NCBI GenBank assembly: GCA_001179505.1
Contig: CDMY01000344.1
Span: 1-64,000 of the forward strand
Direction of reading: 5' to 3'
DNA: 64,000 nt
From: Vitrella brassicaformis CCMP3155
Lineage: Eukaryota > Protista > Chromerida
The translations under genes were made by a program, and so were the position numbers. The notes under the pieces are model-generated. The model made no database searches. It was not told the origin of the DNA and worked only from the letters and a program-made list of their open reading frames with translations. Each line of letters starts with the position of its first letter. Within the stretch, counting starts at the first letter, position 1. Of the stretch, positions 7,485-56,519 are shown piece by piece.

Positions 7485-7778
7485 TTGGCCAACAACCACT
7501 GGCACAGAAGAGCCAACACAACGCCAAGCACAAGCCGGAAGACTGAGAAATGCTGAGGCGCAGATCTCTCACCTCTCCCGCGAGTCTAAGCTCGCGTTGA
7601 TCTCACTGCCGAATTTCGTTGCCATTTGGATGATGGGGTGTGAATACACCCCTCAGGAGAAAGCAGGGTGAAGAAAAACGCCGACATCCCGAACAGCAGA
7701 AGATTCTGCGCTGACGAGCTTCCTTGGCCCATCTCCGAGCATCTGTGCGGGGTTTTCGAGGCTGGACAGGAGGCTGGG

Positions 7779-8651
7779 ATGAGCGGCAGAGAGAATTTCG
7801 TCACGGTTCCGTCGCCTGAAGGCCACACGCTTCACGCCCAGTGCTATGTGAGGGAGGGCTCCGACTCTGCTGTGGTCATCTGCCACGCACACCCCCTCTA
7901 TGGCGCCTCCATGAATGGATATGTCGAGGTGCGGACCAGGCCGACACACACACACACACGACCCGACAGCCATGCAACCGAAAACCAGCGCTGCAATCTG
8001 TGCATTTGGTGCGGTGCTGTTTGTGCTTATGACATGCAGGAGATGATGTATCACGACTTCAAAAGGCGGGGCTACTCGGTCGTGAGGTTCAACTTTCGCG
8101 GCGTGCAGCCGTCCACCGGGGTGCACGGCAACATGGAGGGGGAGGTCATCGATGTCAACGTCATGTGCGAGTACATCAAGGCAGAAACCGGTCAGTCGGT
8201 CAGCAGGGCAAGCAAGAGATCAGATGCGCATGCCCACGCCATGCCATGCCATTCCTGTGTTTCTCTCCCTTCGCACACACGCACAGGGTGCAGTCGACTC
8301 CTCCTGGTGGGTTATTCCTTCGGCTCAGTGGCGGCCTTCCTGGCCGCAGCACAACGCGACGACATCGCCGGCGTGGTGCTGATCGGCTACCCCCTGAGCC
8401 TCTACCACCCCACCTACACAGACGCCCTCCTCTCGCTGGCCTGCCCGAAGCTCTTCATCATCGGCGATGGTGACGACGTCGCGCTGGGTGACGAGTGCGC
8501 GTGGGGGGTGTTCCAGACGTTTGTTGACGAGAGTGTGTGTGAGCCGAAGAGTGTGGAGAGGATTGAGGGCGCTGGGCACTTCTTCCAAGAGATCAGCCCT
8601 GCCAACATCACGGAGCCGTTGGGTCGGTGGCTGGAGGGGCTCAAGGGGTGA
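7779..8651 (+). CDS. Alpha/beta hydrolase, COG2945-like (3 exons; introns 7929-8039 and 8191-8286)
   Basis: Motifs CHAHPLYGASMN and VRFNFRGV are present, with nucleophile elbow GYSFG, acid region IIGDGDD and His motif GAGHFF. The catalytic triad appears intact. Confidence 0.88.
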   Translation: MSGRENFVTVPSPEGHTLHAQCYVREGSDSAVVICHAHPLYGASMNGYVEVRTRPTHTHTRPDSHATENQRCNLCIWCGAVCAYDMQEMMYHDFKRRGYSVVRFNFRGVQPSTGVHGNMEGEVIDVNVMCEYIKAETGQSVSRASKRSDAHAHAMPCHSCVSLPSHTRTGCSRLLLVGYSFGSVAAFLAAAQRDDIAGVVLIGYPLSLYHPTYTDALLSLACPKLFIIGDGDDVALGDECAWGVFQTFVDESVCEPKSVERIEGAGHFFQEISPANITEPLGRWLEGLKG

Positions 8652-9414
8652 GAGAGGTGGAGAGACGAGGCATGTCTGCGCGTAGATAGGGAGAGGTAGC
8701 ACGTAGACAGATAGATAGACGGGCGTTTTGTAGATGGGTGGGTGTTCATCCGGCAGAGAGAGCAATGGTTTTCCTGCGGCGCATCAGTGAGTGAGAATGC
8801 GTGTGTGTACAGCGAAAAAGAAGGCATTCAGTCAGCGTCGCAGACTCGCAGATCTGATATGCTCGGACACAGCAGCGAGCAGGTCTGTTCCCTGAGGACC
8901 TCATCTCTCGAGGGCCCTACAGGGCACAAACTCGCACGTTTGTCTGCCAGGACCGGCCGTGAGGGACGTGGTGTTATGGGTCGGGTTTGGGTTGTATGGT
9001 GGTTTGGTAGTGCATGTGCTAGTCGCATATGTTATTGCGTTTGATGGGCCGTTCCGTTTGTGTCAGACTGCTGATGTCATTCTTGCCGTGTGATGCGCTT
9101 GTGTTTCTGCGATTGCGTGTGCCTTTGCATGTGTGCACATCCGTATTGACTCTAGATCAGACGTGCTGGTCGCCCATGCTTCCGTGAAAGCCAATCATCT
9201 GATCAGGGTTCGGGTTTCAGGGTTGAATGGGATATCATATGGCGCGGTGGAATCGTTCCAAGTGGTCCTGCGCTGAATCACTATTTGCCTTCTGTAGAGA
9301 TCTAGCGATGCCGTGTCTGCCTCGCTCTCCTCCGCCATTTGCAGCCCTCCTTGCCCGCCTCTCGGCTTCCTTCGAGCCGTGCTGACGCTGCAACCACCGG
9401 CCCGTTCGCTCACC

Positions 9415-10100
9415 ATGACGAGCGCTGCAGGTGAGTGAACACAAAAGGCGACAGATCGATGAGCTGCCGGCGCACTCTTTTGCGAACTGCTGATGGCATG
9501 CTGCTGTGTTTTGCAATGCTTGAGTTGTCTGTCTGTGGCGCAGGAAGCGGTCGTCTGCGTGTGGGCGATGTGCGCTGGTGCGGCGTGTCTGAGGGCAAGA
9601 TCAGGCGGGCCAGGCCTGTATTCAACGAGGAGGTGATCAGATACCTCTACGACTGGATGACCGGTTTGAAATGAACACGCACGCACACGCAACGCACGCG
9701 AAGCCCCATGCATTCATTCACTGTTCGTGTGTTGCTGTTGCTGGTGTGACATGGTATCAGAGCGTCACTTGATCTTCAAGCGCAAGAATGCGGGGGAGCC
9801 GGCGCCGTGGACGACGGACCCCGTGCTGCTCCAGTGGCGGTTCTGCAACGTACGCAGAGAACTAGACAGAGAATCAAGGTACGGTGGATGGTTAACAGCA
9901 GGCCGACACAGACACACCGACAGTATTGCCTGTCTGTCTGCCTGTCTGTCTGTCTGTCTGTCTGTGTCTGTGTGATGTGATGTGTTGTGTGCAGGGCACT
10001 GATCGAGCGCATTGTGAAGAATCCCGACCTCTGGTACGGTCAGCTGGCTGAGAGAAATGCACACGTGTGGTGAGGTGATGTACATGTGGCTGTCCAGGGT

Positions 10101-10131
<31 letters not shown>

Positions 10132-11815
10132 CAGCTACCGTGCCAAGGTGTTGAATTGCATCTGGTTCCGGCTGTTCAACAAACAGGAGACGTTCGAGAT
10201 ACTTGGGCCGCTCAAACTGGAGGCAAGCATGCACCAAACACACACCCACATGGACATGCCCTCACCAAATCACACACAACACGAGCTCCCAATGGATGCG
10301 TTTCCTTCTTCCTCTCTCCGTGTGTGTGTGTCTGTGCTGTTGATCTCCACTACACGGCAGGACTTTGCCGCTCTGCATGCCGTTCCGCGGGTGTTCCAGC
10401 ACTACAAGGAGAGGTTTGAGGAGTACCGCCGCAGCCACCCATCCTACCAATTCTTCACCAACGCCTTCCACACCAGGGGCCTCCTCGCCCAGTGGAAGCA
10501 GCCACCGCAGCTCAACGGAGGTATGGCTCCATGCACACATGCCACATCGACAGGATGCACCCACCCATTGCGTGTGTGCGTGCATGCAGGTGAGGTAGCG
10601 TCTGACAACGAGCGCATGCTGTATATGATCGACCACATCTACAGCAGCGGCCTGCTGGTATGTTGACCAGGGGGAGCGCACCTCAGCAATGCAATGCAAT
10701 GCCTGCCTGCATGTCTGTGGGCGTGTACGTGTGTGTGGTCAGGCCAAGATAGCTGTGACGGCTGATCCGTCCTATGTCAAGCCCGGCCTCACACAGAGTG
10801 ACGTCTTCAACACACTCTGCACAATCAGAGGTGGGTAGATGGGTGTGGGTCGGGATGGAAGGTGTGTGTGGTGTGTGTGTGCATATATATACATATCTCT
10901 CTCTCTCCCTGCTGTGTATGTGTAGGTATCGGGTCGTTCCTCGCCTACCAGATGTTCGTCGACTTCACCTACATAGCCGAGTTTCCGTGAGCAGCCAGCG
11001 CACACACACACGAATGGTCGACCGTTTCATGGCTGCATGTGTGTGTATGGTCTGCAAATACCCAGGTTCAGTGAGAATGAGTTCACGGTCGGCGCGATGG
11101 ATGAATGACGGATGGCACACACCACCACACGAGCCCCGCGTGCAACTCGTCACGTGTCTCAGGTTTCCTGCCCCGGGTGCAAGGCGGGGCTGTCGAAGCT
11201 CTTCGACGACCGAGCGGGTCAGTCAAATCACACACACGCACTCTCTCATGTCCATGTGTGTCAATGCCTGCAGGTATGAGTGACGAGGAGCTGCTGTTCT
11301 GGCTACGCGACAGCCTGGAGGCGGCCTTCAACAGCAGGAACCTCCCATTCAACCAGCACGTGAGCCATTAATGCAGAGCAGAGATCATATGACATGACAT
11401 GGCAGAGCCCACGTGTGTGTACGTTACATGTGTGTGTGGTGCAGGAGTTGTTTGACGACCTGCCGGAGGACTGCGCCCGGCTGAACGTCATGTGCCTGGA
11501 GAACGCCATGTGCGAACTCTCCAAGTACACCAGAGGTCAGTCAATCACACACGTCCCCCACACAGCAACTGTGACTGCCTGCATGTCTGCATGTCTGTGT
11601 GTGTTGCAGTGCGTCAGGATGCCGGCACCCCCCGAGTGCGCTATGAGGCCTCCACCGCCCCCCTGCCCGGCGCCACCACCGTGTGGAACACCGGCAAGGG
11701 CAGCGTCAAGACGGCCTCCAGCGGGGCCAAGAAGCGCACGGCGGCTGTGCAGCCGACACTAGACCGGTACTTGGTCAAGAAGACGGCTGTGGGTGTGGGG
11801 GAGGGGGCGGGGTAG
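9415..11815 (+). CDS. 5-hmdU DNA kinase helical-domain / aGPT-Pplase1-type protein (HhH-glycosylase-related fold), about 13 exons
   Basis: Spliced exons give YLYDWMT-ERHLIFKRKNAGEPAPWTTDPVLLQWRFCNVRRELDRESR, NCIWFRLFNKQETFEILG, FFTNAF, GIGSFLAYQMFVDFTY, FSENEFT-VSCPGCKAGLSKLF, EELLFWLRD and LNVMCLENAMCELSKYTR. This order matches the recalled PF18723 pattern (ER..I...K..G.P.PWT.DP.L...RFCNV.RE.DR; G.FLAYQ...D; ENEF; EN.LCE.SKY). Confidence 0.85.
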
Positions 11816-12258
11816 GTGTAGCCAGCCAGCGTGTAGCCAGGTAGGTAGATGGGATGGGATGGGTGGATATGGTCGCCTGATTACTGACTGCAGTGTGGCG
11901 TGCCCGGTGTACAGTGACAGACAGACAGACGGTGGACATGTGTGTGGGTGTGCTGTGCATGAGACTTAATTTGTTGGCTGAGTTCATTCGAGTGGAGGGA
12001 GTGCCATCGGCCAATCAGTGGGTGTTGAACGAACGGGTGTGCAACAGTCTGCTAGACAGCCAAAACACAGGCGGGAGTGGGCGTGGCCGTCATGCACCCC
12101 TCAGATATATACATCAGACACACAAACGCGGCCAATCCATCCATCCATCCATTCCCATCCACTGCCACACATGCACCCCAGACAGCCATTGCATGCACAG
12201 CTACCCCTCCCCTCCCGTAGAGGGGACCAATCCAACTGACGAGAGAGTGGAGTGGTTT

Positions 12259-15200
12259 TCAGCCTGCCTTGCTGGCCGTGTCTCTCTTCCTCTTAAGCCC
12301 TCCCTTGTCTGTCTTGCCGCTACTGCTACTGCTGCTGGTGCCCCCGTTCGCGCGACGCATCTCAAAGGCCCAGCTCTCGTCACCTTCAGGAGGCGACACA
12401 CCAAACCGACCCTTGGATGCATCACGCAACACACGCAGCAGATTGTAGCGGGGGCTAGGGCGGACAGTCAGAGCGATACAGTCGAGGGAAGCATTGGCAG
12501 CTAAGGCCGCGGCGACGCACTGGGCAAAAGAGCGGTGCATCTCCTTTGCCCTGCTATCACTCAGACCTGAAGCGCGACCAAAACCTCTCTCAGCTTTTGT
12601 GCTAATCTCAACCTCAATACGACTAACCCGGCCACTCTCCATGAGGCCTCTCTCCCTCTCTGCGCCTGCCCCAGCCCCCGCCCCCTCCCCACCCTCCCCA
12701 TCATACAGCGACCAAGTGATGTAATGGCTGGTTGAGTTGGCCTTCTGCAGGTCACCTATCGTCACATGAAAGGCTACCGTGAGCGGCCTGCCCTCTGTGG
12801 CGAAAAAGCCGACACTCGGAGGGATGAGACACAGCTCAGTGTGCGGGGTGGCCCACACGTCGCTACTGAAGGTGACCCGCTCGAGGGAAGGCAGATCACC
12901 CAGCACAGCCCCCAGCCCCCCGTCGTAGAATCCCATTCCCCCGAAGTCCCTCTCTTCGACCTCGACCGACTCGACGGCCGGGAAGAGGGAAGCGGGATTG
13001 GCGAGCACGTATGGGGGCAGTGGGTGACCGCCGCCACTCGGTAGCATTGTCAGCTTCTTGATCTTGGCACACTTGAGTGTTGTCAGGTCCGGGTGATCCT
13101 CTTGTCCAGCAGTAGCTTGTGAGAAGAGGTCGACGGTCTCGGCCTGCGTGCAGAGGGTCTGGGCGGTGGGCAGGCCGGCGGCGAGGTCGGCCGCGCTGCC
13201 GTGGAAGGGAAGGCGGAGATGGATGTCAGGGTAGGTCTCTGTGGCGTTGGGGGCGAGACACGATGTCCGGAAACGATGAACGCTCTTGTACACATAAGTA
13301 TGCACACAGACGGGGATTGACCAGTGCCGTGTTGTCGATCGAGGTGGCCTACCGAAATGTTCATTACGGAATTGATGATGGGGTAGCCCAGATTCATCTC
13401 GATCGTCTGCAGCCGCGCCGTTCTCGCTCCCCCGCCACCCATCTGGTCGATGAAGTCATCATCAGGTATCCCATGGGCGCCCTTCAGGCTCACCAGCGTG
13501 TTCCCTAAACGAGTGGACGCACCACATGCGTGCGACGGACAGACTCCTCAATCCTTACATGATGGTGTGTTGCTGAGGAAGTGGGGCACGTTGCCATAGG
13601 TCTGGTGGTGGTTTGTTGTCAGGACGAGCGAATGGATGCCGGCAGATGCCCTCGACACCCAAGAGCGAGGGCCCGTCGCTGGGAACCACACCGACGTGAG
13701 CTCCGACGCTCCCAGCTCTGTCAGCGCTGGCAACTGGTAGTCGCGGTCCTGCACACGCAGACCAAGACACACACACATGGAGGTAAAAGAACTGCCAGTT
13801 GCAGTGATGTGTACGTCACGTCTCACCTGTGCGATTTGGCTCCACGACTGATGCACTGAGGCCTTGTGCAGTTGAGGGAAGACCAGCTGCTGGCCTCTAG
13901 GGGGCATTTGGATGGGTTCGCGCCACTGTCGGCCATGCCGACTCCTTAGGGCGCCACCATCTGGACACGTCCATGCACGCAATAGGCACCAACAATGATG
14001 TCCAGGCAATTTCTTTTTTGTCTGCCTACCGCGATGACGTCTGTATGTCCCTGACCGTGGCGGCAGTAGCCTCGAGCAGCCGTACGAGCGATGGCATCGG
14101 TCGGTGATCCACGGCAAATGACTGGCACGCAGCTAGGCGACCTGAGAAGACCGACCAGGCCATCCGTCTCCGGTGACAAGCCGGCTCTCTGGGACCACCC
14201 ACCTGTCTCAAGCCATGTGTTGGCAATGTCAGGTTTGGGGCAGCGATTGAGTTCGAGGATCGGATGCATGGCGGGCTGCTGGGTGAGGGATTTGAAGTGT
14301 TGGCTGACGGACGAGAGGCACTCCATGGTGGAGATGAAGCCGAGGTAGCCGCCGATGCCAACACGCTGGTCGTCACTCATCCACAGGCCCTCAAGCAGAC
14401 CCTCCAGACACAACAACTCCTGGAAAGGGAAAGCCTCAATATGTACTTTGAATCTTTCCCGCCTCCCTCCCTCCCTCCCTCCCTCCCTCTCTTTCCCTCT
14501 TTCTACCTCTTGGTCGTTCTGGTTTAGATTGTCCATGTAGTGCTGCAGCGTATCGATCTTCTTGACAAACTCTTCTGTCTGCTCCCTGGCCGTGACGGCC
14601 GCGCTGTGCAGCTGCGCCTCGCCATTGCGGCACCCCATCGATATCAGTACATGACGCTGCCGCTCAATCGCCTGACGCACACATGTACAGAACAGAGGGG
14701 CAAACGGGCATGTTAGTGGCACCATGCACATGGCTGCATGGGTCTATCTTGGCTTGACCCGCATGTGGTTCTCCGCTGTGTGTGTCTGTGGAGGCGGGAG
14801 GGCATCCATCGCACTGAACACCTCCTCTGCCTGAGGCATCGCACCGCACACACCACACTGACGTACAACTTTCCATTCGGGTCCTGCTGTTTGTTACCTT
14901 GGCTTTGGCCTCCTCGACAAGTACGAGCTGCTCTTTCAGCGCCTCAGAGACGCTATGGAATGCTGCCAACACATCCTCAGGACCCCTCACTACCACAGCC
15001 GCCGCATCCTGGCCCATGAAAGACACGAGGAAAAAGCACAACATCTGTGATTGATGTATGCAATGTGGACCATCCTCACCTCCATATCGGTATCAGCTAC
15101 TCCCCCGCCGTCAGGCCCGTCCCCCTCCTCATGATCTCCCTCCTCAGTGGCCGGCGCCTTGGCTTTGGCCTTACCCCTCCCCCTCCCCCTCTCCTTAGCC

Positions 15201-27833: not shown

Positions 27834-28575
27834 CGAGCACCACAGCCAGCCTATCGACTACCGAGTCTGTCTGTCTGTCTGTCTGTCTGTCTTGCCCTCA
27901 CCTCGCCCACCACCCTCAGTCGACCGACCACAGCCCCTCCGATAGATAGGCAGACAGGCAGGCCACCTTGAGCCAGGCCCCTTCTCTACCTCTCTACTAC
28001 ACAGATGCTTCAGGGTGCGTATTGTCTGTCTGTCTGTGTGTCTGCGCGCGTGTTGTGTGTCCGCATCTGATGGCTGGTGGAAGACAAGACAGGCAGCTCA
28101 CTCCACCCTCTAACTCTCTCTCGTCTTCGATCACATACGACATACATATGTATCTGCGCGGCCGGACGCCCCACCAAACAGACAGGAAGCGAAGCGATCA
28201 TTCGTGATGGACGGTGACGATGGATGTGCATGTGCGTCATGATGGACGTGTGCGTGGACCAACGAGTGCATCAATGAATGAATGGATGGATGGCCTGCAT
28301 GCACGCAGAGTGCCTTACATGAGTCATCTCGCCATGTAAGTCTTCTGCTCACCTCCCGGCTGTGTGTGCGTCTCTGCGGAAGGTGGTAAGGTCCTCCTCT
28401 CCCCTGCCCCTTCCCTTCCATCCCGCGAGCTTTTCTGGACCTGCGAGCTGGAAAAGCAGATCTGTCGAAGGGAGGGCGAGGCGAATGGGCTTACAGCTCT
28501 CGAGCAGCCATGAGATACACCGACACGAATGGACTTCGCAGCTTCGTCCACGCTGTTGCCGTCCCAGATCAACAA

Positions 28576-31500
28576 ATGGCGACAGCCGAGAAGACCAGCA
28601 TGAATGAATCAGATGAGCATCGAGATGAACCACCCCCGGACGAGCAGCAAGACCAGCCGATGGTCCCTGCCGTTGTCAGGCCCTTCACCCGCACCTCTGG
28701 GGGATGCATCACGGCCATCCGACCGGCATTCTCTCTGGACGGCTCCCTCCTCGCATGCGCGTGTGTCACTGATGCCGTCATCTACTCGACCAAGACCGGC
28801 AAGAGAGTGGCCAAGCTGACCGACAGACACAAGATGCCCATCACTGCCGTCTGCCCTTCTGCCGACAACGGCTGGATCACCGCTGAGCTTGATGGGACGC
28901 TGTGTCTGTGGAGCAGCGACCATGCCCTGCTGACGACGCATGACCTCGAGGCGCCCATTCTCGACCTGCAGTTCGCAGCGAAGGAGAGGAAGTACTATGC
29001 TCTCATCGTCGGCAAGGCGGCCGTTGAAAGCGACGATAACCACCAGCACATGAGTGCGGCAGACGACCGTGACGGTGATGTTGGTGACGACGGTACCCCT
29101 TCCTCATTTGTCTATCAGCTCACCATCAGCCATCGGTCCACCAGCGGCCACATCGTGCTGTCAGCCCCAGGCTCCCACGGCCCGTTGAGGCGCCTGGCCA
29201 TCCGTGGGGACGGTTCCTACGTGGCCGCAGCGACACGAAGACGCGTGCTGGTTCTTTCGGCTGACGGCCACCTGACCAAGCACAAGAGCGGCCAGCCGAT
29301 CGTGTCGATAATGATCCGGCCCGACACGGATGTGGTGATCACAGGCGACAGGCAGGGCGTGATGCACATGCTGACGGTCGACAAGAAGGCGGGCGGGTCG
29401 TCGGTCCGCATGCAGCACTGGCACGCCCATGCCGTGTCGTCGCTGGCGCACGTGAGCGGAACGGAGAGCATCCTGTCGACGGGCGAGGAGGCGGTGCTGT
29501 GCATGTGGAACCTGACCACACACGAGAGGAAGTCTTTGCCACGGATGGGCGCCGCCATCCTGCAGATGGCCGTGGCCGATGACGGGTCGCAGGTGGCCTT
29601 GTGTCTGGCCAACAACTGTGTGCGGGTGGTGGACATCCCTCAGTGGAAGATCGCCAAAAGCATCTATGGCGTCGATCTGGGTGTGGGTGGGGGTGGGCGG
29701 ACACCCGACTTGGTTGCGACCAGAGGGACGAGGCGGGTCTGCGATGCCCTGCCACGCACACAAGCGGCAGGTGCGTCGCTCTGTGGTCATACGTTTATGC
29801 GGTCGCACTTATGGATGGATGTATGGATGGTGGTCTGTTTGTGCAGACACCGAGACGACCGTCATGCTGTGGGCAGATCCCTCACGTGTCCAGTTTTATT
29901 CCCTCACGGCCGACGAGCACAGGGGGCACGTCGAGATGGCCAGAGGTGCGTGGGATAGACACAGACACATTTCCTCCACACACACGTGTGAGTCCTCCTG
30001 TCATGTAATGGTAATGTCATGTGTGTGTGCAGGTCGGATGTATGTGAGTCGGGTCGACGAGCAGGAGGGCATCAAGTGGACGGTCGAGCAGGCGTGCCTT
30101 TCGCCTGACCGTCAACACATGCTCACCGTCGAGACCAGACGGGAAGAACGGTCACACACACGCACTCATAAACTAACACGTCTATCTACACAAGTGCCGA
30201 TTGATTTGATGCGATCTCTCTGTCTCTTGTTTGCGTGTGGTCGTATTGAATGCTCTGCAGCCCCCACCCCCGGTGTGTGTCAGTGGTCAAGTTTTGGTCC
30301 CAGCAGTCGGACTACGGCTACCGGCTCGTCAATCGTGTGGACCTGGCCCACCAGGAACACATCACAATGGCACTCGCGAGACCGATGGTGCGCTCACACG
30401 GGACACACACACACACACGTCGGTCAGGGCACATCACATCTACATGGGATGGGTGTGGGGGTGCTGTTGGATCTTGTCTTTCAGAGTCCCGATTGCTTCC
30501 TCACGACATCAGCGGATGGCACATTCAAGGCACGTGGGCATGGAGTAGCCAACGTGCACCCCGGATGTCACACGTGTGTGTGTGTGTGTGTGTGGCCATG
30601 GTGTGTGTGGCCATGGTGTGTGTGGTCAGGTGTGGCATCCCTTCCCCTCGGCCAACAGCAGCACTCCGTTCTTCGCCCCGTCATCTGTCAACACCTTCAG
30701 GAACATACCTATCACATGTGCGCACGCGATCAACGCACACGGCGGGGGTCTGCACCTGCACTATGCTCCACTCACACTTATTCTGTGCACCTGATCAGGT
30801 GCTGCTTTCTCCTCCGATGGCTCCCTCCTGGCCCTCGGGCACAGCCGCGGCTGTGTGAGCCTCTGGGCGGCGCAGACAGACGGTGAGCAAGCAGCCTTCG
30901 CCTTGCGGCCTTCACAATATTTGCCCGTGTGTGTGTGCATGTGTGTTGTGTTGGTGCAGGTGACCAGTGGGACGTCAGTGAGACCATGACGTGCGGGGCA
31001 AGCCAAGAGGTCCGTTGGTTGGTTCCTGTGTGGTGTGGGAAGATGCTCATTTCTGCATGTATGTGTCCGTTCTGTGATATCTATCTGTCAGGCGATCCAT
31101 TCCGTGGCCTTCGTCGAGGGGCCGTCGCTGCTATGCCTGGCGGTGGCCTACAACCACAACCGCAATCGTACGGCGGTAGGCACCGTGGTGCTGTGGGACC
31201 TGCTCACAATGACGGTAGCCACCACCATCCAGCTCCCCGCGGCCGTCACCCATCTGCTGCCCTCTCCCTCTTCCCACTCGTCCCTCCTCCTCATCGGCAT
31301 GGCGCCCTCTCTGTTCGAAGCCCACACAGTCTGCTGCAAGGAGAGCCAGCACACGCAGCAGCCACATGCGCTTCTGCAGGCCCTCCTGCGGCCACAGTTC
31401 TCATCGGCGTGTTCCATGGACACACAGGTGGTGTGGCGAGGCAGCCTGCCCGGCGCGCGTGCGTGTCTTGACGCGTGTGTTGACGGGAGCGTGCTGCACG

Positions 31501-38507: not shown

Positions 38508-40654
38508 CCTGACTCACGACTCGACTGGCCGCCTCGCGCTGTTTTTTTCGGGCACTGCCATGCCCATTGGTGCGATGTGCACTGTATGTCTTTGATTGAC
38601 CGGCGGGGAGGTGAGAGAAGACCGACTTGTCTGTCTTTGTTTGCTTCTTTCATTGTGTGCGCCCCTGTTGTGTGCGTACGGTCGGTAAGAGAGGGAGTGA
38701 GGCAGTGGGTGGGGTACGGGTCGGCCGATGAGGGCGACAGACAGAGATTTTTGAGGCGCTGGCTGCGCTTTTTTTGCGCTGATTTCCTTCCTTGCTTCCG
38801 TCCGTCCTGCCTTGGGTGCAGGGTGTGTAGGGGTAGGGCTGGCTGTGTATGTGACGGTAAGCGCATCTCGTGTGTATGTGCGACATGACGTGAGATGAGA
38901 TGAGATGCCTGCGGTGATGCATGATTGTATGATGTGGTTTGCGCGGCCCGCCCAATCAGGGAGGGCCTGTCCGCCTGCCTTTTTTGCTTGCTGCCCCTGT
39001 GTGAGGTGACGTGTCTGTCTGTCTGCTGGTGTCTTTTCTGTCTGTCGATCACATCAAGGGATGTGTTTCTTTATCAATCACTACGTCTGTGTGGGCTGGG
39101 TGGGGCGTGAGTGAGTGTATGGATGGTGAAGAGAGAGGTACGGTACATGCATCAAATCAATGCGATAATAAGTGCACTCATTGATTGACTGACTGATGTA
39201 TGGAGTGAGTGATTGCGGTTGCGCGCAAAGGCCAAAGGTCACTCACTCACGCACATGGCATGGCATGGCATGGCACTGCAATCACAGCATCAATCAACAG
39301 ACCGACCGACCGCCCGACTCGACCGCCGGCTGGCTCGGCCCGGCCGCATTGTCAGTCGCACACACGTTGGTTGGCACACACCACACACACACACACACAC
39401 AGAGGGCCACGAAGAATTACGCATGCAAATGCACGCACACATGGACACATAAACGAAACGCATGGATGGCATCTATGGTATGTACGAATCGATCAATCGA
39501 TCGACTGACGCGCTCTCTCACCCAACCCCACCCAACCACAGCCCAGGCAAATCGGTCTGTCTGCCTGCCTGCTTGGGTGTGTATGCTGCTGCTGCTGCTG
39601 GTGGTGGTGGTGTGTGTGTGATGGGCGTGTGTGTGTTGGGTTGGTGTGGGTGGTGGTGCGTGTGTCGTGTCGGCCTCCCTGCATGGCACACACTCATGGT
39701 TGGACAGTAAGTAATGCCACAGCGAGGGCAACAGGACATCACACATACACACAGGCAAGGCAAGGCAAGGCAGGGACACAGAAACACAGATCGATAGATC
39801 GATGTATAGATATATATAAACACCCACCCCTTAATTGTCGCATCTCATTGCATCGCCCCCGCCACCCCACACCCACACCTCATAGACAACAGACGGCGAA
39901 AAACGAGTAAGTAGGCACACCCATACGTAGCACACAGCACACACACCCCTCTCGAACTGACAGACAGACAGACGTGCACGGATACACGGACATATATATA
40001 TAGAGAGAGAGAGAGAGAGTGAGAGAGAGAGTAAGTCGCCCCCAGACAGACAGACAGACAGACACGCACACACGAGTAAGAGCAAAACCTGTGTGTGTGG
40101 ATTACATACATANNNNNNNNNNNNNNNNNNNNNNNNNNNNNNNNNNNNNNNNNNNNNNNNNNNNNNNNNNNNNNNNNNNNNNNNNNNNNNNNNNNNNNNN
40201 NNNNNNNNNNNNNNNNNNNNNNNNNNNNNNNNNNNNNNNNNNNNNNNNNNNNNNNNNNNNNNNNNNNNNNNNNNNNNNNNNNNNNNNNNNNNNNNNNNNN
40301 NNNNNNNNNNNNNNNNNNNNNNNNNNNNNNNNNNNNNNNNNNNNNNNNNNNNNNNNNNNNNNNNNNNNNNNNNNNNNNNNNNNNNNNNNNNNNNNNNNNN
40401 NNNNNNNNNNNNTCATAGGCGTGGCGATCCGACCGATCCACGGAATAGACAGGCACGAAAAGACACGAAAATAGATAGATAGCTACCTCCACTCAACAAC
40501 TCAGAAAGAGAGAGACCGATACATCTCATCTCATATGATCTGAGCTGATCTATGTGCTCTGCACGGCTACCCAGCTGGCTGCACCTGTTCTTCTTTCTCT
40601 ATGGCTGTCCGTCAAGTCAATCTGCCTCTGTCTTGTCTAGGTGACTGTACGCAC

Positions 40655-40723: not shown

Positions 40724-41455
40724 GGGAGGGAGGGAGGGAGAGGAAAGCCGCGAGAAACACTCGGCCGGCCGGAAGGCGGTGGTAAGTCAGGTTAGTTAAA
40801 TAGACCGCGCACACACACAGACGCACACTCATCCTCACCCGCGCAGCCCGCCCCCTCACACACAAAACAAAAAGCCACCTACCCAGCCCCCAGTCAGTCA
40901 ACACCAGTAATCATTCCTTGGTGCGAGCGAGCAAGAATGAACTTGAATCCAATGAATGCCTCATCGACTCGACGGGGGGACCGGACCGATGGTCACATTC
41001 AAAAACGACACTGACTGTCGACACACTGACAGACACGCTGACAGACAGACAGACAGCCGTACTCTAGAGTAGTAGACGACATGAGATGAGATATAGCATG
41101 CACACTCGCACACAGAGAGAGAGAGAATGACAACGGGGGGGGGGGGGGGGGGGGGNNNNNNNNNNNNNNNNNNNNNNNNNNNNNNNNNNNNNNNNNNNNN
41201 NNNNNNNNNNNNNNNNNNNNNNNNNNNNNNNNNNNNNNNNNNNNNNNNNNNNNNNNNNNNNNNNNNNNNNNNNNNNNNNNNNNNNNNNNNNNNNNNNNNN
41301 NNNNNNNNNNNNNNNNNNNNNNNNNNNNNNNNNNNNNNNNNNNNNNNNNNNNNNNNNNNNNNNNNNNNNNNNNNNNNNNNNNNNNNNNNNNNNNNNNNNN
41401 NNNNNNNNNNNNNNNNNNNNNNNNNNNNNNNNNNNNNNNNNNNNNNNNNNNNNNN

Positions 41456-42331
41456 GGAGGGGAGGAGGGGAGGAGGGACAGCACGGCCAGTGCCCGTGCA
41501 TTCAAAATGGTCTCACGCAGGCAGGGGCGGGGGAGGCAGACAGACAAGGCCACTAACACAATACAATCAGGCAGCCGGCCCCTTGCTGTCAGGAGCGTGT
41601 ACGCGGCTACGTATAGACAGACAGACAGACAGACCCATCCACCCCATCCCACCCATATGCGGCAGCATAGCAGCCATAATGCCGTGCAAACAGCAACGGA
41701 CTGATAGCAGGCAGCATCCACCACATCAATCATATCAATCATCCTGTGCGCCTTATCGACGCACCATCCATCCATCCATCTATCTATCCAATCGTCAGAG
41801 CATTCAGGCATCCCGAGAATGACCGAAAGACACACACACACACACACAAATGCACTCACACACAAGGTCACACGCACGCACGCAAAGGGGGAGGGGAGGA
41901 GGGGAGGAGGGGAGGAGGGACAGCACGGCCAGTGCCCGTGCATTCAAAATGGTCTCACGCAGGCAGGGGCGGGGGAGGCAGACAGACAAGGCCACTAACA
42001 CAATACAATCAGGCAGCCGGCCCCTTGCTGTCAGGAGCGTGTACGCGGCTACGTATAGACAGACAGACAGACAGACCCATCCACCCCATCCCACCCATAT
42101 GCGGCAGCATAGCAGCCATAATGCCGTGCAAACAGCAACGGACTGATAGCAGGCAGCATCCACCACATCAATCATATCAATCATCCTGTGCGCCTTATCG
42201 ACGCACCATCCATCCATCCATCTATCTATCCAATCGTCAGAGCATTCAGGCATCCCGAGAATGACCGAAAGACACACACACACACACACAAATGCACTCA
42301 CACACAAGGTCACACGCACGCACGCAAAGGG
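41456..42331. repeat. Tandem duplication, period about 442 bp, 2 copies, between two assembly gaps
   Basis: gacagcacggccagtgcccg starts at both 41477 and 41919. The copies look identical by eye. Confidence 0.85.
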
Positions 42332-48900: not shown

Positions 48901-51274
48901 GTTATATATCTGTGTGCATCTTTGATGGCTGCAGTGAGTGCAGGTGGGTCAGTCAGGTTCCTTCCCTCACTTCCAGCCCGTGTATGACGTTCTCCAGGAC
49001 GGTGCTCCTGCCTTTGCTCGTCTCCGACTCATCGCTCCTGCGTTGCGGTGTGTGTGCAGACAGACAGACCAATGCGTCCACGACACGCACGCACACCCGT
49101 ATTGTGTGTGTGTNNNNNNNNNNNNNNNNNNNNNNNNNNNNNNNNNNNNNNNNNNNNNNNNNNNNNNNNNNNNNNNNNNNNNNNNNNNNNNNNNNNNNNN
49201 NNNNNNNNNNNNNNNNNNNNNNNNNNNNNNNNNNNNNNNNNNNNNNNNNNNNNNNNNNNNNNNNNNNNNNNNNNNNNNNNNNNNNNNNNNNNNNNNNNNN
49301 NNNNNNNNNNNNNNNNNNNNNNNNNNNNNNNNNNNNNNNNNNNNNNNNNNNNNNNNNNNNNNNNNNNNNNNNNNNNNNNNNNNNNNNNNNNNNNNNNNNN
49401 NNNNNNNNNNNNNCCCCCCGATACGCTTACTTGTCGTGTAGCTGTGCCTCCAGCTGCCGAATGCGCCACGACTTCTTAATCAGCTCAACGAACTCCTGCA
49501 CATACATACACACACACACACACGTGTGTGTGTGGTGCGCGGCCGTCTGTGAGGGAATGGGTGGGCTGGTGTCTGTCTTTGGTGCACTTCACCCACCTTC
49601 CTCCTGAAAGTTTCGATCATTCGTTGTGCGATGAGTGCCACGAACAGCGTCACGAAGAACATCAGCAGATTCTTCCAACCTAAGCGACCGATCGTGCAGT
49701 GAGTGCACCGACAGACAGACAGACAGACAGACAGACAGAAAGGAAGCTTGACCCATCCCATCCAGGGGTGCAGGTCAGGAGGCAGGCAGGCAGTCGTGGG
49801 AGGGAGGAGGCCCATCACGTACCGTTTTCCCACCCCGTGGGGTCCCTCTCTGTCTTTTCTGGCGATCCGTATAGAAAGGTCATGAGGCCGTGCAGAAAGA
49901 GCGTCACCACAAACACCACTACCGCACACACCTGGTGGACGCACACCACACACACACACGCAGACAAACAGACACACATGTCAGTCGCTTAGCTTACATG
50001 CGTGTGGCTGTGTCCGTCATTATGTGGTTGTGTGTCATCCCATCCATCGTGTTTCTTACGAATCTGACGGGTACGAAGAAGAGCCCTACGCTGAAGAGCG
50101 CCTTGAGGGCCAGCAGCTGCTGCGCCTCAGTGATGCCTGACAGAACACAGACACATGACATGACATGCAGGAAGGGACACACACACACACGTGCAGTGCA
50201 ACATCCTCCAATTGATTGATTGATGCTTTGGCATCCACCCATCACCTAGCTACCTTTGTTGTATTCGTGCGGCCGGCCAAGCATGGCCGCCAGGCGGAAC
50301 TGATTGCACACAATCAACGCTGATGCATACGTCCACACACACACACACGCACACACACGCACAGAGAGAAAGAGAGAGAGGGAGACGAACATGAGATGGA
50401 TGGATGGATGGTCAGTATGCCCCTCATGCCCCCGCCTCCCCTCCCCAGTGCAGTGCCATGTCAGTGGTTGAGTGGGTGTCTGTCGTAGGTACCGGCGATT
50501 TCGATAGCGAGGAGTGCAGTGAGTATGTATTCCAGGTAGGGCCACGTCCGCCTCGAGCACGGCAACAGGATTATTATCACACCAAAGCCAAAGCCCAACA
50601 ACGGACCAATCAGACGCAGCGCCTACACTCACACATACACACAGACATCCATCCATCCATCAGCGGCTATATGTTGTGTGTGTGTACCTTAGTTACCTGC
50701 ACTGTGTCGGCTCCCTCGAGGATGACCCGCAGGTCGTAGTCGACGGCCACGACGCCCGCAAACACAAAGAGGGCAATGGCGCCCAGCCGCTGACACCGGG
50801 TGGCGATCAGACTCTCATTGTATTTCAAATACTCGCGCTCTGCAGACGTGACGTGACGTGACACCACCCCACAGCACAGACACACAAACATAGAGAGGAA
50901 CGCACACAGACAGACATACTTTCCACTCCTCTCTCTCCTCTGTCTACTTGCTGACCAAGTGCTGGGTCTCTGAACCGCAGTGTCCATCTCTGCCTCGAGA
51001 AGTCGCAGTCAGGTACATGCACCTTCGGGGGCGTCCGGGACCGATACGGACGCCGCTTCCTGCAGAACGCATCCTTGCTGTCCTTGCTGCTGTCCCTGCG
51101 ATTGCTGTCCTTGTTGGCCGCGGCTGACTGGTGTGTTGGTGTCGGCGTCGAGGCACTTGTGGTGGCCGCTGCTGTGGGTGTAGGGAGGGAGGAGGGGGGA
51201 GGGGAGGATGATCTCCTGGCGGCTGCATTGGCGTTGGCCGGGGTGATATCGGGAGCCTGGTGGTTGTCGGGCAT
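44230..51274 (-). CDS. Class I cyclic-nucleotide phosphodiesterase with N-terminal transmembrane region (apicomplexan-type PDE); more than 20 exons
   Basis: Catalytic motifs occur in order: LYHNF-WHAVEVCH, AALCHDV-GHFGRNNDFL, VLYNDMSPMEHFH, LILATDIS, CIKAADISH, AEFFDQ-GDEE and SQRYFI. Upstream exons are hydrophobic (LGAIALFVFAGVVAV; LLMFFVTLFVALIA) and there is a long polyQ/Ser tail. Extra 5' exons up to about 51820 are possible. Confidence 0.88.
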
Positions 51275-54525: not shown

Positions 54526-54851
54526 AATTTTGTCCATCTCTCCTGCTGAGACCGAACCCTAAGACCGAACCCTGCTGGAGAAACCCTGCGTCTGAAGTTT
54601 CGAATCGAAGCCGAGCGCTCAACAGATTCATCACGACAGCCTGAAGGTGAGTGGGACACTCTCATCTCATGTGGCTGACGAGGTGGCGAAATGATTCATG
54701 CACGCCAACCGCCCCACCTCAATACCGAAACACCCAAGCAGTGATCTGCGACGCCAGCTGATCATCAAAAGACGCAGGTCTGCAAGCATCCAACCGAGAG
54801 TCATCCACACGTGGCCGCCAAGGGTCTCGTCCGTTCGTGTGTGTCGCAGGT

Positions 54852-56519
54852 ATGTCAGCCTGGCTGCAGCTAGATGGCGTCGACACCTCGTTTGATGAGG
54901 GCACCAGCGATGCCATTCGGGAGCTTGCCATGGGTGTCATCCACCGCACACTCACCGACACAGGCCAAGTGAGGCAGCTCATCCGGCAGGGGGCAAACCC
55001 GAGTGTCGAGCCCTCACTGCAGCACCGCCATGACGCCACACCTCGGCTGTTGATGTTGAAGAAGGCCTATCCGCTGCTCAGTCTGTCCATCGACGACATG
55101 ACCGACTCCACCATCCCGTCCATCTGGGCAAAGGACCAAGACAACGGGCGACTTCCCGTCAGGCTGCCCCGCTGGCCGTCTCCTCAGCTCCAAGATGCCG
55201 TCATGACCGCACTGATCGACAGCTGGGCTGACATCAACGCGGAAGGCGCCGACGAGGACGGAAGACCCATCCGTGTCGCCGTTGCGGCGGCCAACCTGCC
55301 GGCAGTCGGTCTCCTGCAACGGGGCGTCCAGCTGCACGGATTCCTGGTGATGCGCCTGCCGGAGGACAGTATGTGTCCGCCTACCCCCGAGGGTGAGCGG
55401 CAATTGATGGCCATCTACCGCCGGCTCATTCAGTACGACAGCACCTTGGCAGCCGAACGCGATGAACTGGGCAACACATTGGTGCATTCGGCAGCCAGCA
55501 GAATGTCCAGAGGTCGCTTCTCCCAGGCCTTCAATAGCCAGTACATCGACCTGCTTGTGGACAACGGAGCTGACATCAGGGCGGCCAACAATACTGGCGG
55601 CTACACGGCATTGCACTGGGCGGCGCATCGGGGCTCTTACGTTTTCGCGGGGCTGTGTCGCAAGCTCTCACCTGACGACATCAACAGAGGGACAGACACC
55701 AACTGGACGCCCCTCGTCATCGCTGCCATTCGTCTCCGTATGTCCATTCGGACGCTGGGCGATAACGAGACGGCAGAAGAGCGCAAGGAAGACATCCGCA
55801 CAACGGAAATTCCCAATCTCAAGACCGTCATCCGCACCCTTCTGAGAGCCGGCGGCCGCACGCCCACAAGGCGCAGTGAGCGACGTGAGCGCAGTCTCGT
55901 GCTGGCCGAGTATGCCACGGTGCTGAATGGTCTGTGTGATGTGACCATGTCGGCCATCAACGCCGCCCTCGCCCCCCAGCGCGACCACTCGATGCTGCTC
56001 GCCCGTCTACTGCCCCTCGCACCCCACAACGACGGCAGAGACCCCGCCCCCTCCCCCCTCTCATTCGGACCACACGAGGCAGAGGCCATCGGCTGGAAGA
56101 TCGGCGCCTTCCTGCACGAGCCATTCGCTGCAGCAGCGGCCATCGACGAGTACCTCATCGGCGAGTCGACGCTGAGGCGCCGCGTCAAGGCGGCCATGGC
56201 GCACTTCGTCAAGTCGGCCGCCACACGGACATCCAGCAACAGGGAGGTCATCGGCGACATGGCCAACATGGGCGGCGTCATGGTGCGAGTGCCGCTGCAG
56301 TGCTTCGCCGTTCGGGGTCAGCAGGGTGGGCAGCATCGGCTGCTAGGTTTGCGTGAGGTGGTCCACAAGGCCCGGCTGGACGAGGCGGCCAGCCATGGTG
56401 TGACGGGTGTGGTCAAGGGCTTCAACGCCCACCTGGCTGACGACTGCGTGTTCGAATGGCGGCAGCTGGGTTACATCGACGAGACCACACGGCTGTTCGT
56501 GGCGCTGGGCATCGAGTGA
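54852..56519 (+). CDS. Ankyrin-repeat-like protein of an expanded lineage family; intronless CDS
   Basis: This is a continuous ORF of about 555 aa. It has ankyrin-like segments (GNTLVHSAA, LLVDNGADIRAANNTGGYTALHWAA, NWTPLVIAA) and is a close paralog of 1-1205. Confidence 0.88.
   Translation: MSAWLQLDGVDTSFDEGTSDAIRELAMGVIHRTLTDTGQVRQLIRQGANPSVEPSLQHRHDATPRLLMLKKAYPLLSLSIDDMTDSTIPSIWAKDQDNGRLPVRLPRWPSPQLQDAVMTALIDSWADINAEGADEDGRPIRVAVAAANLPAVGLLQRGVQLHGFLVMRLPEDSMCPPTPEGERQLMAIYRRLIQYDSTLAAERDELGNTLVHSAASRMSRGRFSQAFNSQYIDLLVDNGADIRAANNTGGYTALHWAAHRGSYVFAGLCRKLSPDDINRGTDTNWTPLVIAAIRLRMSIRTLGDNETAEERKEDIRTTEIPNLKTVIRTLLRAGGRTPTRRSERRERSLVLAEYATVLNGLCDVTMSAINAALAPQRDHSMLLARLLPLAPHNDGRDPAPSPLSFGPHEAEAIGWKIGAFLHEPFAAAAAIDEYLIGESTLRRRVKAAMAHFVKSAATRTSSNREVIGDMANMGGVMVRVPLQCFAVRGQQGGQHRLLGLREVVHKARLDEAASHGVTGVVKGFNAHLADDCVFEWRQLGYIDETTRLFVALGIE

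What the first reader, a model, noticed from the sequence alone, without database searches (positions are those of the whole stretch)
9415..11815. Intron-rich homolog of a phage thymidine-hypermodification enzyme (5-hmdU DNA kinase helical / aGPT-Pplase1 domain) in a myzozoan genome
Seen: hand-spliced exons rebuild a complete domain with all recalled conserved blocks in order (PWTTDP..RFCNVRRELDR, NCIWFRLFNK, HhH-like GIGSFLAYQ, ENEF, ENAMCELSKY). About 12 introns conserve frame, so the gene is native and probably expressed. Established: this family works in phage pathways that further modify 5-hydroxymethyluracil in DNA, homologs were predicted in some eukaryotes, and dinoflagellates (related myzozoans) carry abundant 5hmU. 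Inference: this organism may have an uncharacterised DNA base-modification or modified-base processing system. The gene is stand-alone with no P-loop kinase visible, so a partner would lie elsewhere. The usual GPGA-like loop reads CPGC, which may mean altered chemistry.
Basis: partly seen in the sequence, partly recalled or inferred. Interest (0 to 1): 0.85.

Follow-up and report, generated by a model that had tools for sequence, protein, structure and literature searches.

The report
Phage-type DNA-modification gene in Vitrella
The alga Vitrella brassicaformis carries an intact, expressed, 14-exon nuclear gene whose nearest relatives are phage proteins from thymidine-hypermodification systems. 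This makes Vitrella a reasonable organism to test for unusual thymine chemistry, but the gene is already in public databases and its biochemical role is unproven even in phages.

Summary
Window 9415-11815 (+) holds a 14-exon, 13-intron gene encoding 405 aa. A public transcript contig matches all 14 exons at 96-100% per block, with the mismatches only in boundary overhangs. The protein is identical to Vitrella brassicaformis CCMP3155 CEM03549.1 / UniProt A0A0G4EY44. It hits Pfam PF18723 (HMUDK_hel, formerly aGPT-Pplase clade 1) at 210 bits over the whole profile. It keeps nearly all family-invariant residues, including a Cys-Glu motif that lines up, weakly, with the catalytic Cys247 of phage amino-acid:DNA transferases. 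The predicted fold is helix-hairpin-helix glycosylase-like, and the best solved match is that transferase (Z 10). In the tree, the gene and a 67%-identical paralog sit inside a clade whose other members are all phage proteins. dN/dS between the paralogs is 0.28. No partner kinase, transferase or hydroxymethylase lies in the window. No close ortholog turned up in other eukaryotes, so a shared origin with dinoflagellate 5hmU is not supported. The CPGC loop is real and unique to this copy. Function remains inferred: no role was assigned to clade 1 in the phage reconstitution papers I read. This scan had already met the paralog on other DNA (s1-242735).

The parts
9234..9414 (+). 5' UTR (minimum extent)
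   Evidence: Transcript contig L001 starts at window 9234. The ATG at 9415 is the first in-frame ATG after an upstream stop.
9415..9430 (+). Exon 1 (start codon, aa 1-5 and the first base of aa 6)
   Evidence: The exon 1/2 junction is covered by contig L001, and also by MMETSP protein P0001, whose residues 1-103 are identical to the model.
9544..9663 (+). Exon 2 (N-terminal extension shared with the phage relatives)
   Evidence: Aligns with the N-termini of P0159 and the Ackermannviridae proteins.
9761..9878 (+). Exon 3. It carries PWTTDP (9805-9822) and RFCNVRRELDR (9838-9870), the most conserved block of the family.
   Evidence: This exon alone hits PF18723 at 51.3 bits, E 1.4e-13. P61, W62, R78 and D81 are invariant in 93 of 93 aligned sequences.
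9995..10033 (+). Exon 4
10135..10222 (+). Exon 5 (NCIWFRLFNK block), followed by the only GC-AG intron (10223-10360)
   Evidence: R110 and N113 are nearly invariant.
10361..10520 (+). Exon 6
10590..10657 (+). Exon 7
10743..10830 (+). Exon 8
10926..10986 (+). Exon 9. It carries the helix-hairpin-helix hairpin GIGSFLAYQ (10926-10951, first Gly split across the intron) and the nearly invariant Asp245.
   Evidence: (profile positions 174-194). hhalign pairs this hairpin with the FGPWIGFK hairpin of clade 2.
11066..11087 (+). Exon 10 (22 nt, FSENEFT). The following intron 10 (11088-11162) is retained in one assembled isoform.
11163..11217 (+). Exon 11. It carries the Gly/Pro loop, which reads CPGC here (11169-11180).
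   Evidence: (profile positions 203-233).
11274..11359 (+). Exon 12
11445..11535 (+). Exon 13. It carries ENAMCELSKY: Glu326 (11499-11501), Cys330 (11511-11513), Glu331 (11514-11516) and Lys334 (11523-11525).
   Evidence: Cys is present in 91 of 93, Glu in 88 of 93 and Lys in 87 of 93 aligned sequences. hhalign pairs Cys330 with Cys247 of M6 gp51.
11610..11815 (+). Exon 14: a disordered, Lys/Arg-containing C-terminal tail and the stop codon
   Evidence: pLDDT is below 50 from residue 349 of P0158 (about residue 360 of the full protein) to the end. No Pfam hit.
11816..12066 (+). 3' UTR (minimum extent)
   Evidence: Contig L001 reaches window 12034 and L008 reaches 12066.

Best explanation
Shown: this is the intact, transcribed nuclear gene of Vitrella brassicaformis for a stand-alone PF18723 protein (aGPT-Pplase clade 1 / HMUDK_hel). 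The domain spans roughly residues 35-340, preceded by a short N-terminal extension shared with its phage relatives and followed by a disordered basic tail. Its nearest relatives are proteins of tailed phages. Since entering the lineage it has gained 13 introns, duplicated, and stayed under purifying selection. Inferred, about 45% likely: it works in the nucleus on DNA in the manner of the structurally related phage amino-acid:DNA transferases. In that scheme the helix-hairpin-helix module binds the duplex and a C5-substituted uracil (5-hydroxymethyluracil or an activated ester of it) is flipped into the pocket. Cys330, helped by Glu326 and Glu331, attacks C6. The C5 substituent leaves through an exocyclic methylene, which a nucleophile or a reductant then captures. 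The product would be either a further-modified thymine or plain thymine. The source of 5hmU would have to be encoded elsewhere; a TET/JBP-like gene was noted elsewhere in this genome but I did not test it. Any activating kinase would also have to lie elsewhere. The Gly-to-Cys change that creates CPGC is specific to this copy. Its effect is unknown.
For: Gene model and splicing. Identity to CEM03549.1 / A0A0G4EY44. PF18723 at 210 bits over the whole profile. phrog_2396 at 244 bits. Family-invariant residues kept. AlphaFold model with pLDDT 84 and pTM 0.82. The top solved-structure match is the DNA-bound transferase PUGT/gp46 (8z2n, Z 10.0, 218 residues aligned), and ranks 1-43 are all helix-hairpin-helix glycosylase-type folds. 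Two local hhalign matches to clade 2 are colinear with nearly equal spacing (hairpin to hairpin, Cys330 to Cys247; 84 versus 83 residues). Cys247 and a neighbouring Glu are essential in clade 2 (PMC8989533; PMC11472151). DNA-directed fusions occur in the family (Chromo, PHD, C5 DNA methylase, PolA, D5 primase-helicase, HhH-GPD). A basidiomycete Chromo-fusion cluster has 139 members. Phage nesting has SH-aLRT 100. There are 454 phage records with homologs, the best being Ackermannviridae at about 35% identity over 93% of the length. The closest full-length relative (45% identity) lies beside a thymidylate-synthase-like gene, a dNMP kinase and a dUTPase_2 gene on a phage contig. dN/dS is 0.28 over 331 codons.
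Against: No biochemical activity was assigned to any PF18723 member in the papers I could read. M6 gp55 (PF18723) was dispensable for glycinyl-thymine formation, and the reconstituted pathways need only the kinase plus the clade 2 transferase. The sequence-level link to clade 2 is very weak (hhalign probabilities 0.9% and 2.4%). Z 10 is within the range that helical folds can reach without kinship (note). No 5-HMUDK, AADT or thymidylate-synthase-like sequence lies in the 64-kb window. The rest of the genome could not be searched. No paper in the searched library reports 5hmU in Vitrella. A nearly invariant Gly in the DNA-binding loop is replaced. The only paralog is broken in its mRNA.
Confidence: 0.45

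Rival explanations
1. The protein acts on free nucleotides or nucleosides rather than on DNA. It could salvage or sanitise 5-hydroxymethyl-dUMP-like compounds, in the way the similarly folded queuosine-5'-monophosphate hydrolase DUF2419/QNG1 works on a free nucleotide.
For: DUF2419 structures are the second-best structural matches (Z 8.3-8.8, about 230 residues aligned). In phages the gene often sits within nucleotide-metabolism clusters: thymidylate-synthase-like, dNMP kinase, dUTPase_2 and RNR on L002; dCMP deaminase next to P0011; RNR next to P0058; and thymidylate synthase in pelagiphages (PMC9599517). No DNA-kinase partner is visible here.
Against: The helix-hairpin-helix hairpin and the Gly/Pro loop, which contact DNA, are conserved across the family. 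The best structural match is a DNA-bound enzyme. Family fusions are to chromatin readers and DNA enzymes.
Confidence: 0.2
2. It is a helix-hairpin-helix DNA glycosylase or repair protein that removes or recognises 5hmU or another damaged pyrimidine, without any group-transfer chemistry.
For: The fold matches AlkA, Mag1, AGOG, OGG1, MutY and EndoIII at Z 5-8. One family member is fused to an HhH-GPD module (P0076). A nearly invariant Asp lies ten residues after the hairpin.
Against: There is no Pfam HhH-GPD hit for this protein. The family's hallmark is the invariant Cys-Glu-x-x-Lys motif, shared in position with the covalent-catalysis Cys of clade 2 and not a glycosylase signature. Phage contexts are biosynthetic rather than repair.
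Confidence: 0.12
3. It is a transferred relic that is transcribed but has no present function, on its way to the fate of its broken paralog.
For: No partner genes are nearby. A nearly invariant Gly is substituted. One assembled isoform retains intron 10 with a stop codon.
Against: The 405-codon ORF is intact across 13 correctly spliced introns. dN/dS is 0.28 at dS 0.88. All the other invariant residues are kept. The model is confidently folded.
Confidence: 0.08
4. It is phage or bacterial contamination, or an assembly artefact.
For: The nearest relatives are phage proteins.
Against: The gene has thirteen spliceosomal introns, which are removed in independent transcript assemblies. It is embedded in a 64-kb scaffold with intron-bearing eukaryotic genes. 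Its GC3 matches its neighbours.
Confidence: 0.01

Closest known systems
Phage aGPT-Pplase clade 1 / HMUDK_hel proteins (Pfam PF18723, phrog_2396), for example the Ackermannviridae protein annotated in Yersinia phage CAU_YEP3 (XPQ57365.1) and Pseudomonas phage M6 gp55
   Same: Same Pfam family with full-length coverage. About 35% identity over 93% of the length to the Ackermannviridae versions, including the N-terminal extension. Same invariant residues. They fall in one well-supported clade.
   Different: This is a eukaryotic nuclear gene with 13 introns. It has a disordered basic C-terminal tail and a CPGC loop instead of GPG[A/S/C]. There is no neighbouring nucleotide-metabolism or kinase gene. 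The phage proteins themselves have no assigned activity in the papers read.
Amino-acid:DNA transferases (AADT / aGPT-Pplase clade 2, Pfam PF18724): PaMx11 gp46 (PUGT, PDB 8z2m/8z2n), M6 gp51, ViI gp247
   Same: Best structural match (Z 10). Same helix-hairpin-helix-containing two-bundle fold. Colinear hairpin and Cys motifs, with Cys330 pairing with the catalytic Cys247 and Glu326 pairing with Glu243.
   Different: No PF18724 hit and no PDB sequence hit, even with a family profile. hhalign probability is below 3%. This is a different clade, and the transferase activity is shown only for clade 2.
Basidiomycete Chromo-domain fusions of PF18723 (for example Clathrus columnatus GJJ08985.1) and a PHD-finger fusion
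   Same: They are eukaryotic members of the same family, and the fusions imply a chromatin or DNA setting.
   Different: Identity is only about 24-25%. The Vitrella protein has no reader domain. In the ML tree it groups with phages rather than with the fungus, although an AU test cannot reject a Vitrella-plus-fungus clade (p 0.42).
Helix-hairpin-helix DNA glycosylases (AlkA, Mag1, AGOG, OGG1, MutY) and the queuine-salvage hydrolase DUF2419/QNG1
   Same: Shared overall fold (Z 5-9).
   Different: No sequence-level family match, and a different conserved catalytic signature (Cys-Glu-x-x-Lys).

Membership tests
Pfam PF18723 (HMUDK_hel, formerly aGPT-Pplase clade 1) | HMM score above the curated gathering cut-off (25 bits), with full-length domain coverage | tested here: met
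   210.2 bits, E 5.2e-62, profile positions 2-276 of 281. Exon 3 alone scores 51.3 bits.
Pfam PF18723 (HMUDK_hel, formerly aGPT-Pplase clade 1) | Family-invariant residues: PWT.D, F.N..R..D, R..N, G.F, D, GPG loop, CE..K | tested here: met
   All are present except the first Gly of the GPG loop, which is Cys here and Gly in 89 of 93 sequences.
Pfam PF18723 (HMUDK_hel, formerly aGPT-Pplase clade 1) | All-helical, helix-hairpin-helix glycosylase-like fold | tested here: met
   AlphaFold model with pLDDT 84. The top 43 solved-structure matches are all HhH glycosylase-type folds, with PUGT first at Z 10. This is a predicted model only.
Pfam PF18723 (HMUDK_hel, formerly aGPT-Pplase clade 1) | Genomic association with a 5-hmdU DNA kinase or a dUMP-hydroxymethylase-like thymidylate synthase, as in phages | tested here: not met
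   tblastn with M6 gp54, M6 gp51, M6 gp58 and the L002 TS-like and dNMP-kinase proteins found nothing at E below 0.2 in the window. This is a contextual feature of phage members, not a requirement for family membership. The rest of the genome was not searchable.
Amino-acid:DNA transferase (Pfam PF18724, AADT) | PF18724 HMM match | tested here: not met
   There is no PF18724 hit at E 0.01 or better, while M6 gp51 scores 159.6 bits. The protein is not filed as an AADT.
Amino-acid:DNA transferase (Pfam PF18724, AADT) | Catalytic Cys (Cys247 in gp46 and gp51) with a nearby essential Glu | tested here: inconclusive
   hhalign pairs Cys330 with Cys247 and Glu326 with Glu243, but at 0.9% probability. 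The pairing is supported by a colinear hairpin match and by the structural alignment ranges.
Phage-type thymidine hypermodification pathway (5hmU source + 5-HMUDK + transferase + tailoring enzymes) | Presence of 5hmU in DNA and of the partner enzymes in the same genome | not testable with these tools
Only this window is available. No paper in the searched library reports 5hmU in Vitrella.
HhH-GPD DNA glycosylase superfamily (Pfam PF00730) | PF00730 HMM match and the glycosylase catalytic signature | tested here: not met
   There is no PF00730 hit for this protein. The resemblance is at the fold level only.

The most novel reading that the evidence does not exclude
Vitrella runs a nuclear, post-replicative thymine-modification or demodification pathway. 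A TET/JBP-type dioxygenase makes 5hmU in DNA. This phage-derived enzyme, with or without an activating kinase, then converts it to a hypermodified thymine or back to thymine. If the product were a hypermodified thymine, I know of no other eukaryotic thymidine hypermodification beyond base J (from my own knowledge, not searched). The copy-specific CPGC (CxxC-like) loop might supply redox chemistry for a reductive 5hmU-to-T step.
Probability: 0.15. Interest if true: 0.85.

Novelty: new member of a known kind. Interest (0 to 1): 0.45.

Why it matters
Thymidine hypermodification through 5hmU has been characterised enzymatically in phages. Eukaryotic homologs were predicted about a decade ago (Iyer et al. 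2013, recalled from memory; the paper is not held in the library). I found no experimental follow-up in the papers searched. This gene is a clean eukaryotic case. It is intact, spliced, expressed and selected, and it sits in a culturable alga that belongs to Myzozoa together with dinoflagellates, whose DNA is rich in 5hmU. It gives a concrete protein and organism in which to test two things: whether eukaryotes process 5hmU enzymatically beyond base J, and what the unassigned clade 1 enzymes do. It is also a tidy example of a phage-type gene that became a 13-intron nuclear gene. The limits are that the protein is already in public databases under an automatic name, that no partner genes are shown, and that no ortholog was found in other alveolates. 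The finding is a lead rather than a discovery.

Tried and rejected
Public transcript contigs from JGI and MMETSP served instead.

(2) Pfam on the stop-free read-through of exons 5-7 (window 10079-10663) gave nothing, probably because of the translated introns. The full protein later covered that part of the profile.

(3) Sequence search of the PDB found no relative, either with the single protein or with a 93-sequence profile. The profile hits were de novo helical bundles and count as noise.

(4) Foldseek alone gave no significant match (best E 0.27). The second look with VIA-align was needed.

(5) Profile-profile comparison of clade 1 with clade 2 gave only short, low-probability matches.

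(6) The profile search of the 5.8-billion-protein set was swamped by roughly 280-aa prokaryotic and phage members and said nothing about eukaryotic range.

(7) NCBIfam and PADLOC gave no hit.

(8) I considered independent acquisition by fungi and by Vitrella. The ML tree separates them, but the AU test does not reject a joint clade (p 0.42), so I do not claim it.

(9) Iyer et al. 2013 (PMC3763556) is not held. What I say about it is from memory.

(10) The low-GC 'islands' at 40-44 and 49 kb turned out to be runs of N.

(11) P0002 (1645 aa, 17 short stretches) was set aside unexamined because it looked like a repeat-driven match.
Full report
**What is in the sequence**

Reading 9000-12400 and translating three frames gave a coherent model on the + strand. 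It has 14 exons at these coordinates:
- 9415-9430
- 9544-9663
- 9761-9878
- 9995-10033
- 10135-10222
- 10361-10520
- 10590-10657
- 10743-10830
- 10926-10986
- 11066-11087
- 11163-11217
- 11274-11359
- 11445-11535
- 11610-11815

The 13 introns are 56-138 nt long. All are GT-AG except intron 5, which has a GC donor. The ORF encodes 405 aa.

**Splicing, expression and organism**

Public transcript assemblies served instead.
- A search of 1.84 billion representative proteins with exon 3 alone (38 aa) returned an MMETSP transcript protein that is 100% identical over that exon (P0001).
- A follow-up search returned P0158. This 394-aa JGI protein equals residues 12-405 of my model.
- Its 1618-nt contig (L001, JGI 3300017297) aligns to the window in 14 blocks at exactly my exon borders, from 9234 to 12034. 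Eleven blocks are 100% identical and three are 96-99%, with the mismatches only in overhangs past the exon borders.
- The same 90% cluster contains P0163: NCBI CEM03549.1, UniProt A0A0G4EY44, EukProt Vitrella_brassicaformis_P008624. It is letter-for-letter my model.

So the organism is the chromerid Vitrella brassicaformis CCMP3155. The gene is transcribed and spliced as modelled, and it is already annotated publicly. UniProt's automatic name for it is '5-hmdU DNA kinase helical domain-containing protein'.

A second contig (L008) retains intron 10, which carries an in-frame stop.

**Family membership**

- Exon 3 alone hits Pfam PF18723 at 51 bits. Exons 9, 11 and 13 hit the same profile colinearly.
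- The near-full protein scores 210 bits (E 5e-62) over profile positions 2-276 of 281. It has no other domain.
- It hits phrog_2396 at 244 bits. It hits nothing in NCBIfam or PADLOC.

In a 93-sequence alignment (A1) the protein keeps every invariant or nearly invariant residue except one. In full-length numbering the kept residues are P61, W62, T63, D65, F73, N75, R78, D81, R110, N113, G235, F237, D245, P264, G265, C330, E331 and K334. The exception is the first Gly of the GPG loop, which is Cys263. This gives CPGC, where 89 of 93 sequences have G in the first position.

**Fold**

An AlphaFold model built on A1 has pLDDT 84 and pTM 0.82. It is all-helical, and the last 45 or so residues are disordered.

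Foldseek alone was not significant. VIA-align then ranked the phage 5-PmdU glycinyltransferase PUGT/gp46 (8z2n) first, at Z 10.0 over 218 residues. Next came the queuine-salvage hydrolase DUF2419 (Z 8.3-8.8), then AlkA, Mag1, AGOG, OGG1, MutY and EndoIII. The top 43 rows are all helix-hairpin-helix glycosylase-type folds. The tool warns that helical folds can reach such Z values without kinship, so I treat this as consistent rather than decisive.

There is no PDB relative at the sequence level.

**Relation to the characterised phage enzymes**

Pfam now separates three families:
- PF18748: the P-loop 5-hmdU DNA kinase, for example M6 gp54.
- PF18724: the amino-acid:DNA transferase, formerly clade 2, for example M6 gp51.
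- PF18723: formerly clade 1, for example M6 gp55 at 190 bits.

The experimental papers show that the kinase plus the clade 2 transferase are necessary and sufficient for the group transfer. They show that M6 gp55 is dispensable for it. They also show that a Cys and a neighbouring Glu are essential in clade 2 (PMC8989533). The structure paper names Cys247 as the nucleophile that attacks C6 (PMC11472151).

SP10 gp186 fuses the kinase to a clade 1 domain, and the kinase part alone is active (PMC5889632 and PMC8989533). This fusion probably explains the current Pfam name.

None of the papers I read assigns an activity to clade 1. They do note that these phages convert part of their 5hmU back to canonical thymine. 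In the passages I retrieved, no enzyme is assigned to that step. That clade 1 might perform it is my speculation.

hhalign between A1 and clade 2 gives only two short, low-probability matches:
- P0158 residues 306-326 pair with gp51 residues 234-254. This pairs Cys330 with Cys247 and Glu326 with Glu243.
- The hairpin at P0158 residues 222-232 pairs with gp51 residues 151-161.

The two matches are colinear, with spacing of 84 versus 83 residues. They agree with the ranges of the structural alignment. I therefore consider it likely, but not shown, that clade 1 uses the same covalent Cys chemistry.

**Origin**

tblastn found homologs in 454 phage records. The best are ViI-like Ackermannviridae at about 35% identity over 93% of the length, N-terminal extension included.

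The closest full-length relative in the large protein set is P0159 (45% identity, 404 aa). It sits on a 6.2-kb contig with these neighbours, all hitting PHROGs, so the contig is a phage:
- a divergent thymidylate-synthase-like gene
- a dNMP kinase
- a dUTPase_2 gene
- a ribonucleotide reductase

A maximum-likelihood tree of 96 sequences pairs the Vitrella protein with its paralog (SH-aLRT 100). It places the pair in a six-member clade (SH-aLRT 100) with P0159, the Yersinia Ackermannviridae phage protein, P0011 and P0058. The contigs of the last two carry portal, Mu-F, primase, RNR and Acb1 genes and so are phage.

The fungal Chromo fusion (Clathrus columnatus) and a PHD fusion fall just outside this clade. 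An AU test does not reject a Vitrella-plus-Clathrus clade (p 0.42), so I make no claim about the number of transfers.

The direction of transfer, phage or bacterium to eukaryote, is inferred from two things. The family's distribution is overwhelmingly viral and bacterial. And one search returned no homolog between 45% and 100% identity other than Vitrella's own sequences. That search was word-indexed and limited to proteins of 144-457 aa. On this evidence a shared ancestry with dinoflagellate 5hmU biology is not supported.

**The paralog**

P0151 and its cDNA L007 are 67% identical to this gene. The paralog keeps GPGC and MCELSKY. Its assembled mRNA lacks the roughly 17 codons of the helix-hairpin-helix hairpin and shifts frame. 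This agrees with an earlier follow-up in this scan on other DNA of the same genome (s1-242735), which called that copy broken in its own mRNA.

P0001 and L008 are reciprocal chimeras of the two genes, switching near the exon 4/5 junction. I read them as assembly artefacts.

Nei-Gojobori dN/dS between the copies is 0.28, with dS 0.88 over 331 codons. This indicates purifying selection over most of their shared history. The CPGC change arose in this copy only.

**Context in the window**

No kinase, transferase or thymidylate-synthase-like sequence is detectable in the window. The long ORFs nearby look like an alpha/beta hydrolase, a WD40 protein and an ankyrin protein. GC3 is 0.82 for this gene against 0.74-0.77 for two neighbouring ORFs.

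Only about ten residues precede the region homologous to the phage proteins. There is therefore no room for a bipartite plastid leader. A nuclear or cytosolic location is my inference. The Lys/Arg-containing disordered tail is compatible with nuclear import, but this was not tested.

**Verdict**

The observation and the family assignment are correct. The protein most likely acts on C5-substituted uracil in DNA through Cys330 (about 45%). Three rivals remain open:
- action on free nucleotides, about 20%
- a glycosylase or repair role, about 12%
- a functionless relic, about 8%

A whole modification pathway in Vitrella is possible (about 15%) but rests on untested partners.

This is a new, well-documented eukaryotic member of a known family. 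It is already present in databases and its function is open. I rate its interest as moderate.

Noticed in passing
window 40110-40500, 41155-41500, 49115-49500 (approximate): The sharp low-GC dips in the composition profile are runs of N, that is, assembly gaps flanked by (AG)n, (ACAG)n or poly-G. They are not AT-rich DNA.
   Followed up: yes
window 41456-42331: A perfect two-copy tandem repeat of 442 bp (100% match) lies directly beside an assembly gap. It is probably a scaffolding or gap-closing artefact rather than a recent duplication.
   Followed up: partly
window 10223-10360: Intron 5 uses a GC-AG splice pair (GAG|gcaagc). Its removal is confirmed by the cDNA contig.
   Followed up: yes
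window 11088-11162; L008: One assembled transcript retains the 75-nt intron 10, which carries an in-frame TGA. This splits the ORF into pieces of 266 and 162 aa.
   Followed up: partly
L007 (JGI 3300017148 contig, 1608 nt); P0001; L008: A 67%-identical paralog exists elsewhere in the Vitrella genome. Its mRNA lacks the hairpin codons and is frameshifted, but it keeps GPGC and MCELSKY downstream in another frame. Two public transcript assemblies are reciprocal chimeras of the two paralogs.
   Followed up: partly
L002 1049-6226 (Logan SRR21707689 contig): On this phage contig the closest PF18723 relative is followed by a divergent thymidylate-synthase-like gene (33 bits to Pfam TS, 255 bits to phrog_3676), a dNMP kinase, a dUTPase_2 gene and an RNR. 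I recognise this gene set, from my own knowledge, as the one that makes non-canonical pyrimidine DNA. No 5-HMUDK is visible on the fragment.
   Followed up: partly
proteins P0099, P0115, P0150, P0127, P0059, P0060, P0132, P0076: PF18723 occurs fused to Chromo (the basidiomycete Clathrus columnatus; an Atlas cluster of 139 mostly basidiomycete members), PHD finger, C5 DNA methylase, family A DNA polymerase, D5-type primase-helicase, AAA_25 and an HhH-GPD module.
   Followed up: partly
window 7668-8651 (+), 28510-29958 (+), 54837-56519 (+): Long ORFs have weak to moderate Pfam hits to alpha/beta hydrolases, WD40 beta-propellers and ankyrin repeats. They are ordinary eukaryotic neighbours with no evident link to the gene studied.
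   Followed up: no
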